Shown: in pieces, positions 24,825-30,470 of the stretch
Numbering within the stretch: position 1 is the stretch's first letter
How the letters are laid out: each line of letters starts with the position of its first letter
Source: Prasinococcaceae sp. CCMP 1430
Lineage: Eukaryota > Plantae > Prasinodermophyta
Direction of reading: 5' to 3'
Length of the DNA: 30,470 bases
Assembly: GCA_013416795.1 (NCBI GenBank)
Contig: RQSC01001226.1
Span: 4,613 to 35,082 of the forward strand
Made by a program: the position numbers and the translations under genes
The notes under the pieces: model-generated
Seen by the model: only the letters and a program-made list of their open reading frames with translations
What the model was told of the DNA's origin: nothing
Databases searched by the model: none

Positions 24825-27800
24825 ATGGCGCCCCGAGAGGACGCGGGCGCTCCGCCGGCGGACTCGCCGCTGCAGCTGCCGGCGGTGCTCGTGCTCGACC
24901 TGATCGGCGAGGGAAGAGGGAGCGACCAACTGGGGGGTGACACAGGCGCCACGGTTGAGTACGTGTATCCGCGTGCTGCGGCAGCCGAACTCGCTCCGCT
25001 CGGTGGGGTCATGCTTGCCGCAGCCAGCGCGGCGGCCCGCCTGGCCGGTGGTGGCGAGGCCAAGCGTGGCACCGCGGCGCGAGACGGGCTGGCGCGCTCG
25101 GTTGTCCTGCGAGGGTCGCCCCCGCTGCTGTGCGTCTTCGCCGCAAAGGGAGAGCGCCGAGCGTGCGCGGTGGTGCAGCCTTGGGATGCACGCGCGCGCG
25201 GCGCCGGCGCAGATGCAGATGCTACGATGGCTGTGTGCGCCGCGCTCGTCGACGACGCGCAATTCGCTGCAGGCCGCCTCGATGACTGGAGGCTCGAATG
25301 TGCGCGCACACACTCCGAGAGCGGCAGCCACGATGCACTCACTATGGACAGCGCAGCTCCGACGAGTGACAGCGATGCCCTCGCTCTGGATGCCATATTC
25401 GAGGCGCTCCTCGAGCGCGCGTTCCCGCCCGAGCTGCGGCGCGTGCCCGCACACACTCTGGGGTCGTTCGGCGGGCGCTGCTTGATGCCGACACTTGACT
25501 CGGGCGAGGCCATGCTGGCAACGGTGGGAATGGACGCACGAGTGCATGCTCGCCCGCACTCGAGCGCTAAAGCAAGCAACGCCCTGCCGCATGTGCCACC
25601 GCCAAACGAGACGACAGCAGCAGCGGTGCGCGTGGCGCTCGCGGCCGCCGAGCGCGCTCACGCACCCGATGCCGACGCCGGCATGCTCGGGTGCACGCTA
25701 GATGCGCTCGCCAGGCGTGGGGGGGGCGATACGGCGAGCAGCAGGTGAGAACATGCCCTCGTTTGTCGGTGTGGGGACATTCACTCGCTCGCGCGCCCCT
25801 CGCATGCGCCCGCGCGGCTAGGCGCGTACTCTTTGTGCATTTGATGTACCAGAGACACTGAGTGCGGACCGCGCGTGAACGCTGACTGGCTCACTCACGC
25901 ACTGTACACTCCAACACTCACACCGGTGACCATGATGGGGGCCTTCCCGCTCTCCGCCGCGCTCTTCGCCGCCAACGACGCGCAGCGATGCTGTGCGTCA
26001 GCGGCGCAGTGGTGGGGACGTCGATGGCGCCCTCGGATGCGCGCCGCTGCTGGCGTGCAGCGCGTCTGCGCGGGCTGCTCGCGCCTCACCAGCACACCGC
26101 CACGGGCGCAATGGCAGTGCACTGTGGTAGTAAGCGTGCAAGCAAGCGCACGCCCGCTGGCGGTGGGCCGCGGACGCTCCTAATGCACGCGAGCGGCTCG
26201 GTGCTCCTTCTCGTACTAGCGGACGGGCCCGATCCTTCGGAGATGGAGGCGCCCGCAGCATTCACGCGGGTGCAACACGCGAGCATCGAATCATACACGG
26301 ACCTTTCGCCCCCATCGCCGTCGCTAGGATTCTCACCTCCTCCATCGCCACCGGCGGGGGCCGCCAGCGGAAGTGCGTGGGGCGCCGGGACCGTCGGCGG
26401 TGCCGACGATGGCGGAGGTGACGTGCCAAGTCTGGCTGCCGCTGAGGAGGAGGAATATGTCTACTATGAGGACGACGAGGGCAATGCTGGCTACACTGAC
26501 GCTGCGGGAAATTATTACCCTCTGGACGATCTGCATGGATACTACACAGCAACCGGCGACTACGTGCTGTACGACATTCCGGGCTCCTCGCGGCGCCCGC
26601 ATAGCACACACAAGCGGCTGACTCCGGGAAGCTCGCGCTTCGGCAACTTCCGCGCGCGCGCGGCAGAATCGGAGGGGCGAGTGATGGCCAAGAAGAGCTT
26701 CTCCCTTGCTAAGGTTCCCGTTGGCGCCAAACTGAGCGCGCACAAGCGGCTAACCCCCGGTAGCTCGCGCTTCGGCAACTTCCGTGCGCGCGCGGCAGAA
26801 TCGGAAGGGCGAGTGATGGCCAAGAAGAGTTCTTCTCCTGTTGGCGTCCGCAGCCCACGCAGTTCAGCAAAGCCGGGCAACCCTGGTAGCGTTCATGTGC
26901 GGCTCACCGCCGGGAGCGGACGCTTTGGGAATTTCCGGGCGCGTGCTCAGGGTTCCGCCGAGAAGGTAAAGGTGCGGCGGCGGCTTGAGATTGCCGAAGG
27001 CGACGCAGAGGCAAGCGAGGAGGCGCCCCAGGAGGAGGCCGAGGGCGCGTCTGCTGCGGCTGCAGACTCCGTGACTGCTCCACATGAGGCCGTGCCTGCG
27101 CCCGCACCCGATGGTGGAGCGGCGCCCACGAGCCCGCTCGAGATTGCCGAAGGCGACGCAGAGGCAAGCGAGGAGGCGCCCCAGGAGGAGGCCGAGGGCG
27201 CGTCTGCTGCGGCTGCAGACTCCGTGACTGCTCCACATGAGGCCGTGCCCGTGCCTGCGCCCGCACCCGATGGTGGAGCGGCGCCCACGAGCCCAAAGAG
27301 CCGCTTTGCGGCATTTCGGAGTCGCGCGGCTCGCTCTGAGGAGCGCACAACAGCGCGTCGACAGAGAGATGGATCCTCGTCAGGACAGAGCAGCTCGATC
27401 TCCCACGAGGTGAGTTCTCGCGCGTGCGCCTGAGTGTCGTCTCGTGCCATCGGAAGCGGATGCGTCTCAGTGCGTGCCTGCAGAGCCTCTGATACCCCTG
27501 CGCGCATATCTTAGGCTTCGAGCGCCAACGAAAGCGACACCACAGCGTCCGCGTCCGCGCATGCGAGCGCGTCTTCCCAGAGCGGCAGCGACACGCTGGC
27601 CACGCGCCTCGACGCGTTGCTGGCAGCTCCGCGCGTGCATGACGCCGATGCCGAAGCGCTTAGCGCGGCAGTGTCAGAGTTGACGGCATGCGGTGCGCTA
27701 GCAGAGCTCGAGGACGCGGTGGCAGCCGCAGAGATGGAAGCAATGCGCCTCATTGCGGGTGGTGGTGGCACGGGGCGCGCGGCGGCAGGCGATGTCGTGC

Positions 27801-28183
27801 TGGCGTGCTATGAGCCGCTCTCAGGTTTCTTAGCAGCGCCGCTGCTTCTTCCAGGCGTGGCCACTGCGGCGAGTGTGGCCGACATTGGCGCTGGCTCGGA
27901 AGACGATGCTCGTGTCCCTCGGAGCTATCGCTACGCGGCGCTCAGCGCGGCGGCCGCGGTCCGCACGGGCGCCGCTCGCGCAGCGTGCGCGACGGAGGGA
28001 GCCAGCGCTCCCGAGGAGATCGTCACGAGCGTGGCCGTTCCCGCGCGCGCTCATGCGCTGCTTCACTCGCGGCTCGACCGCTGCGGGCGCGAGACCTACG
28101 TGATGGGAAGCAGCGCTGCGCCAGCGGGCGTGCGCATGGCTGTCGCGGCCGTCAGGGCCCGCAGGGCCCTGAAGTCTGTTTAA
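24825..28183 (+). CDS. INTU: Inturned-like tri-longin protein (CPLANE/CCZ1 family). Likely exons 24825-25744, about 25986-27409, 27515-28183
   Basis: Longin 1 is VLVLDL...VEYVYP...ELAPLGGVML and LDAIFEALLERAF. Longin 2 is AAMLCVSGAVVGTSMAPSD...LRGLL. Longin 3 is VLACYEPLSGFLAAP...EEIV...GRETYV. Intron 27410-27514 is in phase 0. The first junction has an unresolved phase mismatch. Confidence 0.65.
26609..26947 (+). repeat. Intragenic peptide repeat HKRLTPGSSRFGNFRARA, three copies
   Basis: Copies at 26609-26698, 26741-26830 and 26894-26947. Confidence 0.9.
26987..27294 (+). repeat. Near-perfect 153-bp in-frame tandem duplication encoding an acidic Ala/Glu/Pro linker
   Basis: 26987-27135 and 27140-27294 are identical except for a 6-bp insertion (CGTGCC). 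Confidence 0.93.
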
Positions 28184-28252
28184 GGTACCCTCGCAGCGAC
28201 AGGGCGCGACACGTACGAGGCGGCGAGAGTGGCGAGCGGTGCGCGCGTTCGC

Positions 28253-29701
28253 TTAGAGCAGTGTGACGACGATTTGCCTCTCCGAGCCCCCTCCCCAGCC
28301 ACCGCCATCGTGATGTTCAACAAGTAGTACACCGGCCCCCTCGGGAAGTGCGAGCTCACCGCCGCGTACGGGCACGCACACGCTGACGCCCAGTAGCGTC
28401 GATTTGATGTGCCCGACCATGTCATCCTCGCCCTCCGCCGTGTGTCGGAAGAACTCATAGTGCCACGCCCGCGGGACCACCGCGCTGGCAGCCTCCTCAA
28501 GTTCTCGCGCTGAGCGGAGCGCGCCCAGCACCAGCGCGGCACTGGTGTGGCGTACGAAGACGTGCACGGCCCCACTCTCGCTACCGCCCGCCGCTGCGCT
28601 CACGGCATCGCGTACTTTCTCAGTGATGTCGACTGCGCCACGGCCGCCGGCGCTCACCGACAGCGTCGTCTGTGCGCGCGCAGGCAGGAGCTGCGCGGCG
28701 ATGCGAGCATCTTGCGCGCCTTCCGCGTGCCGTGCAAGCCACACGCCTTGCCACGTTCCGGTGAGCGGTCGTCCATCCGCGAGCGGCACGCAAACGCTGC
28801 CGCCAATCATTGCGCCCAGTGCGCACACGCCGGCGCGCTCGTCCGCGGGCGCTGCAGACGCGCCGAGCGCGTTGGCAGCGACGCGCGCGAGCGCCGCAGC
28901 CATGTCGACGCGCACATCTGGGTCGCAATTTTCGTTGAGCGTGAGGCTCGCAGCGCGCGCGGCCGAGTCGTTCACATCGTCGAGAAGGCTCATCGTGAGC
29001 ACGCCGCGCTCGTCGACCGCCCCTGTAGCGCGGGCGCCGCGCGTGTCGCGTGAGGGTACGGCTGCGAGGGCGTCGCGGTGGACGAGCGCACAGCCCGCGG
29101 CGTCGGAACGCGCGGAAGGGAGCGAGGTCACTCCAGACGACCCCGCACCGCCGTCGAAGAGCGTCACGAGCACCTCTGCGTCGCGCGAGCTATGCCGGCA
29201 CAGCGGTGGGTCAGGCGGGCACCTCCATTTGGGGTTCGGGGAATGCGGCCGGCGCGTGCGCGTGCTCGCGCGTCCAACTGCACGCTGGCGGGCACGCACC
29301 TGCCACCACCGAAGTCGAACACCCACACGCCCGGTGCCCCGCCCAGTTGCACCTCGCCATCGACCACCCGCAGCTGTAGCGTCGGCCCAACGAGCGCAGC
29401 GAGGAAATCGGCAACGCTGGAATCGCGAAGCGCTGCGCTGGCACACGCGCCGACACCACCGAGCACCGCGGCGATGCCCTCGCCGTCGCATCCCGCGAGC
29501 CCTAGGGCCGTGCCAGCGGCGCGCGCACACAGAAGGACCTCGCCGCTTCCCACGCGCGCGAGCGCCTCCGCACCCACCGCTGTCGTGAGCGCGCCGGCGT
29601 GGATGGTTGCAGCTGTGCTCCCACACCCGAAATCCTCGCGGCCTTCGATTTCATCTTTTCTGCCGTCGCATCTGCCATCTGGCATCTGGCCCGCATCGGC
29701 A
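28253..29701 (-). CDS. Protein of three fused YjbQ/UPF0047 (secondary thiamine-phosphate synthase-like) domains. Exons about 29701-29300 and 29189-28253; 5' exon unresolved, possibly near 30200-30260
   Basis: The phase-2 intron 29190-29299 (AG|GTGCGT...CATAG|C) gives FDFGGGSSRDAEVLVTL. Domain 2 has ASLTLNENCDPDVRVDM and GTWQGVWL. Domain 3 has FVRHTSA and RHTAEGEDDMVGHIKSTLLG. Confidence 0.82.
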
Positions 29702-29779
29702 CTGCACGCAAAAGACTGAAAAGAGCCAACGACGTGCACAACAGGCAACGAGAGCGAGCGCCTGTGGCTGGCCGGAGCC

Positions 29780-30150
29780 GATCCGCCCCGAACCGACCGA
29801 CCGATCCGGGCGCGACCGATCCCGCGATCCGCCCCGCGTGGTGTGCCGCTGCCGGCTCGGTTGCCCGGACGCCACCCACCCTCCCGGCAGACAGGCAGGC
29901 AGGCGCTCGACTGACCGACCGATGGTGAGCGAGGGAGGGCGCGCGCCCGTCCGCGCCCGCGCTCGCGCGCCCCCACCCAGAAAGCGACCCGACACGCCGC
30001 GCCGCGATCGTCCGAGCCGGGGCGAAGGCCGGCCCGCGGGAATGGCTGGCACGCGGACTGGCTGAGATGGTGAGGGAGAACAGCTTCCACGACCAGGCCA
30101 GCCAGCGAGCCAGCGAGCCAGACCAGCCAGCGCCGGCCAGCCTGCCAGCA
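29780..30150. repeat. Low-complexity CCGA/CCAG simple repeats, probably intronic or upstream of the YjbQ-like gene
   Basis: CCGAACCGACCGACCGATCC at about 29787-29806; CCAGCCAGCGAGCCAGCGAGCCAG at about 30097-30120. Confidence 0.55.
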
Positions 30151-30470
30151 CACACCAGTCCACCGCACGCCCATCCCTTCACCCATCCGCTCACTCATCA
30201 TCACATCACCTTCGTGGTTGCCTTGCACCGTCCCACGGGCGAGCAAATCCTGACATGCCAGAAACGCTGCAGCGCGCTGTGTGATGAAACAGAGCCTACG
30301 AGTGGTGTCAAAGTGAAAGGCTTCAAACTTGGGGGTTGTTCGTTCGTGATGACGAGAACGAGAAGAAATGCACGTCGCACGCACGCCGCGCGCCGAGCGC
30401 GCGCCGGTTTTGGGGCGGGCGCGGCGTGTACCCGCACCCCCGTGGGCGCCGGCCGCGCCCCAGCCAGGGG

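What the first reader, a model, noticed from the sequence alone, without database searches (positions are those of the whole stretch)
28253..29701. Single-chain YjbQ pseudo-trimer with complementary motif loss
YjbQ/UPF0047 proteins are normally single domains of about 140 aa. To my knowledge they form homotrimers with metal or active sites at subunit interfaces. After splicing, this gene encodes three tandem domains. Domain 1 has lost all signature motifs. Domain 2 keeps NENCDPD and GTWQG but lacks the HTS and HxK histidines. Domain 3 keeps HTS, H..EG.DDM.GHIK and EH but lacks NENxDP and GTWQ. This reciprocal pattern is what would be expected if only one composite site survives, at the domain 2/3 interface, in an asymmetric fused trimer. 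I do not recognise this architecture.
Basis: partly seen in the sequence, partly recalled or inferred. Interest (0 to 1): 0.7.

Follow-up and report, generated by a model that had tools for sequence, protein, structure and literature searches.

The report
Three YjbQ domains fused into one
This algal gene joins three copies of a small, normally trimer-forming protein (YjbQ) into one chain and keeps only two complementary halves of the conserved residues. Dozens of relatives in marine algae and alveolates show the same pattern, which suggests the YjbQ active site is built across the border between neighbouring units.

Summary
A minus-strand, two-exon gene (exon 1 29685-29300, GT..AG intron 29299-29190, exon 2 29189-28256, stop 28255-28253) encodes three tandem YjbQ/UPF0047 domains.

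- **Domain 1:** all motifs are lost, but it is still a YjbQ domain (hhalign 97%).
- **Domain 2:** keeps only NENCDPD and GTWQG.
- **Domain 3:** keeps only HTS, H..EG.DDM..H.K and EH.

A 432-aa intronless homologue folds as one compact body (pLDDT 93, pTM 0.93). About 60 multi-domain relatives from Chlorophyta and Alveolata show 50 cases of "NEN/GTWQ-only domain followed by His-only domain" and none of the reverse order. The least decayed forms read [N-only][complete][H-only]. Two colinear derivatives each lost both halves of one further site. The window is of the [dead][N][H] type.

The architecture is not unique. An ESM Atlas cluster holds 160 members, all auto-named "secondary thiamine-phosphate synthase". 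I found no paper that describes it.

Limits:
- The first about 28 codons differ from a wild (Tara) contig.
- The joined exon 1 + exon 2 protein was not built.

The parts
29300..29685 (-). Exon 1 (ATG at 29685; 128 codons + 2 nt). It encodes most of decayed YjbQ domain 1.
   Evidence: Translation. Weak PF01894 hit, E 0.13. The domain-1 alignment against single-domain YjbQ gives hhalign 97.2%. BLASTP to P0002 residues 65-113 gives 39% identity. The 5' part (29601-29685) is not shared with Tara scaffold L002.
29190..29299 (-). Intron, 110 nt, GT...AG, length 3n+2.
   Evidence: ends GTGCGTGC / CGGCATAG; junction codon AGC. The exon 1 and exon 2 frames differ. The homologue P0002 on contig L001 is one uninterrupted 432-codon ORF across the equivalent point.
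29147..29189 (-). Start of exon 2. It holds the last beta-strand of domain 1 (EVLVTLFDGG, 29147-29176).
   Evidence: It aligns with P0002 EVVCTLFEGG. That stretch is strand E135-144, the last strand of domain 1 in the P0002 model.
28682..29146 (-). Domain 2, the 'N-only' YjbQ domain. It has NENCDPD (28916-28936) and GTWQG (28745-28759). The HTS, H..EG.DDM and H.K histidines are lost.
   Evidence: PDB phmmer aligns exon-2 residues 77-167 to 1xbf and 1vmh, including NEN.DPD and GTWQG.
28256..28681 (-). Domain 3, the 'H-only' YjbQ domain. It has HTSA (28538-28549), HTAEGEDDMVGHIK (28403-28444), EHHD (28307-28318) and GGGWGGG (28286-28306). NENxDP and GTWQ are lost.
   Evidence: (iE 2e-34 to the YjbQ HMM, positions 4-137). 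The equivalent domain of P0002 superposes on 1ve0, 1vph and 1vmf with Z 10-11.4 and rmsd 1.3-2.0.
28253..28255 (-). Stop codon (TAA).

Best explanation
The gene encodes a single-chain pseudo-trimer of the YjbQ/UPF0047 fold. Free-standing YjbQ proteins are homotrimers. I infer that in them each of three equivalent sites is built from the 'N-set' (NENxDP + GTWQG) of one subunit and the 'H-set' (HTS, H..EG.DDM..H.K, EHR: three histidines plus acidic residues, probably a metal centre) of the next subunit round the ring. In an ancestor of green algae and/or alveolates the three subunits were fused head to tail with 2-5-residue linkers. Once fused, the sites could decay independently. The site between domain 3 and domain 1 was lost first, giving the extant [N-only][complete][H-only] forms. 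One of the two remaining sites was then lost in different lineages. The window's protein is the [dead][N-only][H-only] form. Domain 1 survives only as a structural wedge that closes the ring. One composite site remains, made of domain-2 N85/E86/N87/D89/W146/Q147 and domain-3 H214/H249/E252/D255/D256/H260/K262/E291/H292 (exon-2 numbering). Its chemistry is presumably that of the YjbQ family, whose physiological reaction is still unknown; weak thiamin-phosphate synthase activity is the only one reported. Shown: the three domains, the motif states, family-wide co-retention and co-loss, and compact predicted folds. Inferred: the site lies at the domain 2/3 interface, it is metal-dependent, the intron is spliced, and the order of losses.
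For: - **Domains and motifs:**
- **Splice model:** P0002 is a 432-aa homologue (53% identical over exon 2) on an intronless Tara contig. It has the same three domains and the same motif pattern.
- **Predicted folds:** AlphaFold of P0002 gives pLDDT 93.2 and pTM 0.93, with domain linkers of 2-5 residues. The window's own exon-2 product gives pLDDT 87.4 and pTM 0.89.
- **Fold matches:** domain 3 of P0002 matches solved YjbQ chains at Z 10-11.4. An ESM Atlas cluster of 160 eukaryotic proteins matches the whole model at TM 0.90.
- **Motif census:** there are 50 N(i)->H(i+1) neighbour pairs, 0 H-only->N-only pairs, and no [complete][dead][dead].
- **Least-decayed forms:** [N-only][complete][H-only] occurs in P0004, P0005 and P0006.
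- **Colinearity:** both derived types align colinearly over their full length with those proteins (P0014 vs P0004 E 3e-100; P0002 vs P0005 E 2e-72). They are therefore alternative losses, not permutations.
- **Intermediates:** P0014, P0020 and P0010 keep remnants such as NDxxDP and PHTSA in the decaying halves.
- **Conserved columns:** the motif-bearing invariant columns of alignments A2 and A5 are the domain-2 N-set and the domain-3 H-set.
- **Geometry within a domain:** HTS sits in the turn before, and NEN at the far end of, a 7-residue beta-strand (DSSP). The two motifs of one domain are therefore about 20 A apart and unlikely to share a site.
- **Homotrimer state of free YjbQ:** 3 or 6 chains per PDB entry; 1vmf is used as a homotrimer in PMC10857811; 2cu5 is in a trimer set in PMC7582526.
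- **Conservation gradient, window vs P0002:** domain 3 67%, domain 2 48%, domain 1 34%.
Against: - No coordinates were available, so no distance between domain-2 and domain-3 residues was measured, and no overlay on a crystallographic trimer was made.
- The relatives share ancestry, so the 50:0 count is not 50 independent events.
- The domain tree groups domains by motif state rather than by position and is poorly resolved (55 of 103 inner branches open). The order of losses therefore rests mainly on full-length colinearity.
- No RNA evidence supports the intron or the 5' end.
- The assembly has His where more than 90% of relatives, and the wild contig, have Arg in the EHR motif. It also has a different 5' end, so this copy might be impaired.
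- The physiological reaction of any YjbQ protein is unknown.
Confidence: 0.75

Rival explanations
1. There is one shared site on the pseudo-threefold axis. In YjbQ trimers the conserved residues of all three subunits would line a single central pocket, as in the Toblerone-fold cyanuric acid hydrolases. The fused protein would simply have trimmed redundant copies, and the surviving N-set and H-set would meet at the centre rather than at a pairwise interface.
For: The whole P0002 model gives weak matches (Z 4.4-5.0) to Toblerone-fold enzymes, whose single active site is central and built from three concatenated repeats (PMC3758960). Any two domains of a three-membered ring touch, so adjacency alone does not exclude a central site.
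Against: A central pocket does not explain why losses always come as N(i) together with H(i+1), nor why [complete][dead][dead] is never seen. HTS and NEN of one domain lie at opposite ends of a 7-residue strand, which fits two peripheral sites better than one point on the axis. The Toblerone matches have rmsd about 5 A and 7-13% identity, so they are analogy only.
Confidence: 0.1
2. The protein is a non-catalytic derivative. The fused protein would be a pseudoenzyme that has kept one ligand- or metal-binding pocket and works as a sensor, chaperone or scaffold rather than carrying out YjbQ chemistry.
For: Two of three sites have been discarded and one whole domain is dead. The assembly's copy even carries His for the near-invariant Arg of EHR. 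No physiological reaction is known for the family.
Against: Every residue that is invariant in single-domain YjbQ is still invariant in the surviving halves across Chlorophyta and Alveolata at 30-40% overall identity. This is what is expected of a working catalytic site.
Confidence: 0.1
3. It is a gene-model artefact. The intron would not be removed, or exon 1 would not belong to the gene, and only a two-domain protein (domains 2 and 3) would be made in this organism.
For: There is no RNA evidence. Prokaryote-style gene callers produce a 306-aa product starting just inside exon 2 (P0001). The 5' end of exon 1 differs between the assembly and the wild contig.
Against: Exon 1 encodes a recognisable YjbQ domain 1 that is colinear with domain 1 of the intronless homologue. 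Its last strand lies in exon 2, right after the proposed junction. The splice sites are canonical and restore the frame. All full-length relatives have three domains.
Confidence: 0.05

Closest known systems
Single-domain YjbQ/UPF0047 proteins (Pfam PF01894, TIGR00149; solved as homotrimers: 1VE0, 1VPH, 1VMF, 1VMJ, 1XBF, 2CU5, 2P6C, 2P6H)
   Same: The fold is the same (Z 10-11.4, rmsd 1.3-2.0 for domain 3 of the homologue), and the conserved residues are the same. The three units presumably form the same ring.
   Different: The three units are in one chain. No single domain carries the full motif set. Only one N-set/H-set pair is left in the window, or two in the least decayed relatives, so the particle is intrinsically asymmetric.
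Other fused YjbQ proteins of marine protists: [N-only][complete][H-only] (P0004, P0005, P0006) and [N-only][H-only][dead] (e.g. Bathycoccus prasinos CAL6329870.1, Amoebophrya CAD7946326.1, Perkinsus KAF4674807.1)
   Same: Same family, colinear over the full length, and the same rule that an N-set is followed by an H-set.
   Different: The window, like Vitrella brassicaformis CEM28744.1 and P0002, kept the domain 2/3 site and lost the domain 1/2 site. The [N][H][dead] forms did the opposite.
[quoted passage not shown]
   Same: It follows the same evolutionary route: a homotrimer turned into a single chain with pseudo-threefold symmetry. There is weak whole-model similarity (Z 4.4-5.0).
   Different: The repeat comes from a different superfamily. 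The three repeats jointly form one central site and all stay functional, and no reciprocal half-site decay has been described.

Membership tests
YjbQ / UPF0047 (PF01894, TIGR00149) | Sequence match above the curated family threshold | tested here: met
   For the exon 2 product, PF01894 gives 118.5 bits (cut-off 27) in 2 stretches, and TIGR00149 gives 118.8 bits (cut-off 67.75). Domain 1 is recognised only by profile-profile comparison (97.2%).
YjbQ / UPF0047 (PF01894, TIGR00149) | YjbQ fold | tested here: met
   The P0002 model (pLDDT 93) has domain 3 matching 1ve0, 1vph and 1vmf at Z 10-11.4, with 123-133 aligned residues and rmsd 1.3-2.0. Foldseek TM by target is 0.77-0.86. The window's exon-2 model was predicted (pLDDT 87) but not itself searched.
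YjbQ / UPF0047 (PF01894, TIGR00149) | Full set of conserved residues (HTS, ENxD, H..EG.DD..H, GxWQG, EHR) within one domain | tested here: not met
   No single domain has the full set. Domain 2 plus domain 3 together have it once. The protein is therefore a derived member of the family, not a canonical one.
YjbQ / UPF0047 (PF01894, TIGR00149) | Homotrimeric assembly | not testable with these tools
   Here it is replaced by an intramolecular three-domain body (pTM 0.93 for P0002). The oligomeric state of the fused protein is unknown.
YjbQ / UPF0047 (PF01894, TIGR00149) | Weak thiamin-phosphate synthase activity / thiE complementation (Morett et al. 2008, cited in PMC3020362 and PMC3010111) | not tested
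   This needs a bench assay. The original paper is not held in the library.
Toblerone-fold cyclic amide hydrolases | Significant structural or sequence similarity of the repeats | tested here: not met
   Z is only 4.4-5.0, rmsd about 5 A and identity 7-13%. There is no Pfam hit. It is analogous, not homologous.

The most novel reading that the evidence does not exclude
The fused YjbQ proteins form a natural half-site complementation series, going from 3 sites to 2 to 1, with the last step taken in two alternative ways and probably more than once. This would show that the unknown YjbQ active site is assembled from the NEN/GTWQ face of one subunit and the tri-histidine face of the next. It would also show that fusing a homotrimer released its sites to decay one whole composite site at a time.
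Probability: 0.6. Interest if true: 0.65.

Novelty: new variant of a known kind. Interest (0 to 1): 0.6.

Why it matters
YjbQ/UPF0047 is a family found in bacteria, archaea and eukaryotes. Nine or so structures have been solved, yet no physiological function has been agreed.

The fused algal and alveolate proteins act like a mutagenesis experiment done by evolution. They show which conserved residues work together, namely the N-set of unit i with the H-set of unit i+1. This places the site at the subunit border and shows that one site per particle is enough.

That gives concrete targets for mutagenesis, metal analysis and ligand soaking.

It is also a clean new example of a homo-oligomer becoming an asymmetric single chain, alongside the Toblerone fold, but with stepwise and alternative loss of redundant sites.

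Tried and rejected
- The exons were handled separately by reference, and the full-length natural homologue P0002 stood in for the whole protein.
- **Model coordinates:** they are not exposed, so the residue-distance test and an overlay on a crystallographic trimer could not be done.
- **Original YjbQ paper:** Morett et al. 2008 is not held. Searches by PDB code gave only evidence of trimer status.
- **Metagenome scans:** two exact-match scans for the two versions of the 5' junction both came back empty, which is uninformative.
- **Domain tree:** the tree of 106 domains grouped them by motif state and was largely unresolved. I did not use it to order events and relied on full-length colinearity instead.
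- **Circular permutation between [dead][N][H] and [N][H][dead]:** considered and rejected, because both types align colinearly with [N][NH][H].
- **Domain 1 as an unrelated leader:** rejected by hhalign.
- **First word-indexed protein search:** it found only 3 relatives. The exhaustive search was needed to find the family.

Full report
**What is there.**
The finding lies on the minus strand of a GC-rich (about 65-72%) eukaryotic window. I did not test that name.

- The in-frame ATG is at 29685, and exon 1 runs down to 29300.
- A 110-nt GT...AG intron occupies 29299-29190.
- Exon 2 runs from 29189 to 28256, followed by TAA.
- The intron length is 3n+2, so the exon 1 and exon 2 frames can only be joined by its removal. 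The junction codon is AG|C.

Each exon was used by reference.

**The three domains.**
- The exon 2 product hits PF01894 twice (E 2.3e-34) and TIGR00149 (E 1.3e-34).
- Against PDB sequences, residues 77-167 align with the C-terminal two thirds of YjbQ chains, including NEN.DPD and GTWQG. Residues 184-292 align with a whole YjbQ chain, including HTS.
- Exon 1 alone is barely recognisable (E 0.13). However, an alignment of the first domains of seven such proteins matches a single-domain YjbQ alignment over almost the whole domain (hhalign 97.2%, E 4e-11).
Domain 1 has nothing. Domain 2 has NENCDPD and GTWQG only. Domain 3 has HTS, HTAEGEDDMVGHIK and EH only.
- Script-derived coordinates are listed under parts.

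**Support for the gene model.**
The best evidence is P0002, a 432-aa protein that is 53% identical over exon 2. It is encoded as one uninterrupted ORF on a Tara Oceans contig. It is colinear with exon 1, the junction and exon 2, and it has the same three domains with the same motif pattern.

A second Tara scaffold (L002) is 99.4% identical to window 25310-29600 and carries the identical intron, so it says nothing about splicing. It also loses all similarity upstream of window 29600, inside exon 1. The wild version reads MASASAAATP... there, starting MAS like P0002. The true 5' end in this organism is therefore open.

**Structure.**
- With a 48-row alignment, AlphaFold gives P0002 a mean pLDDT of 93.2 and pTM of 0.93. 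The three alpha/beta domains are joined by 2-5-residue linkers.
- Domain 3 superposes on 1ve0, 1vph, 1vmf and others with Z 10-11.4 and rmsd 1.3-2.0 (Foldseek).
- The whole model matches an ESM Atlas cluster of 160 eukaryotic, mostly chlorophyte, proteins at TM 0.90.
- The window's own exon 2 product gives pLDDT 87.4 and pTM 0.89.
- Weak whole-model matches (Z 4.4-5.1) go to engineered single-chain trimers and to the Toblerone-fold cyanuric acid hydrolases. That fold is itself described as a concatenated YjgF-type trimer (PMC3758960). This is an analogy, not homology.
- Free YjbQ proteins are homotrimers (chain counts; PMC10857811 and PMC7582526).

**The family.**
An exhaustive search with P0002 found 1477 proteins at E <= 1e-3, including dozens of 370-490 residues. 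Named members come from Vitrella, Bathycoccus, Amoebophrya, Perkinsus and Lankesteria. Where sources give a name at all, it is the automatic "secondary thiamine-phosphate synthase enzyme".

Coding every domain for its N-set (EN + WQ) and H-set (three histidines) gave three arrangements:
- [N-only][complete][H-only]: P0004, P0005, P0006.
- [dead][N-only][H-only]: the window, P0002, P0007, Vitrella P0009, P0011, P0015.
- [N-only][H-only][dead]: the majority, including Bathycoccus.

There are 50 neighbour pairs in which an N-set is followed by an H-set. There are none in which an H-only domain is followed by an N-only domain, and there is no [complete][dead][dead].

Both derived types align colinearly over their full length with the [N][NH][H] proteins (for example P0014 vs P0004 E 3e-100, and P0002 vs P0005 E 2e-72). 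They are therefore alternative decays, not circular permutations. P0014, P0020 and P0010 still show remnants (NDxxDP, PHTSA) in the decaying halves.

In alignments A2 and A5, the invariant and near-invariant columns that carry the family motifs are the N-set of domain 2 and the H-set of domain 3.

**Reading.**
What is lost is always the N-set of unit i together with the H-set of unit i+1, and what is kept is always such a pair. The simplest explanation is that one functional site is made of these two halves from neighbouring units.

This fits the model's secondary structure. HTS lies in the turn before, and NEN at the far end of, a seven-residue strand. The two motifs of one domain therefore point to opposite sides.

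The window's protein would thus have one site, at the domain 2/3 border, with domain 1 kept as a structural third of the ring. Identity to P0002 falls from 67% (domain 3) to 48% (domain 2) to 34% (domain 1).

The three histidines plus acidic residues suggest a metal centre; that is inference. The chemistry is unknown, as it is for the whole family.

**Limits.**
- Coordinates of the models are not exposed, so no inter-residue distance was measured.
- The relatives are not independent samples.
- The domain tree was confounded by motif state.
- There are no RNA data.
- The assembly's copy has His where relatives and the wild contig have the near-invariant Arg of EHR.

**Novelty.**
The proteins themselves are in public databases, so the architecture is not new as data. 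What is new is the recognition of a single-chain pseudo-trimer with ordered, complementary half-site loss, and what it implies for the YjbQ active site.

Noticed in passing
window 29601-30470 vs L002 1-1841: A Tara Oceans scaffold is 99.4% identical to window 25310-29600 but shares nothing with the window upstream of 29600, which is inside exon 1 of this gene. So the assembly and the wild population differ by a rearrangement or replacement at the gene's 5' end. The wild version starts MASAS..., like homologue P0002.
   Followed up: partly
window 28310-28312: In the EHR motif of domain 3 the assembly has His (EHHD). The wild scaffold has Arg (CGC), and more than 90% of relatives have Arg. It could be a strain-specific substitution at a near-invariant site or a sequence error.
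   Followed up: partly
window about 26980-27300 vs L002 4148-4516: BLAST of the wild scaffold against the window gives several overlapping hits of 46-159 bases here. This suggests a short repeat whose copy number or arrangement differs between the two.
   Followed up: no
P0008 (565 aa): A five-domain relative reads [N-only][H-only][dead][H-only][dead], with the last two units nearly identical to the preceding two. It is either a recent internal tandem duplication or an assembly artefact.
   Followed up: no
P0048 (Perkinsus chesapeaki KAF4674807.1, 1153 aa): Here the fused YjbQ module is followed by about 800 further residues with no YjbQ similarity. This is a possible gene fusion or a merged gene model.
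   Followed up: no
window 27617-28183 (+): A 188-aa ORF converges on the YjbQ gene, ending 70 bases from its stop. It is also called on the wild scaffold (182 aa) and has no Pfam family on record.
   Followed up: no
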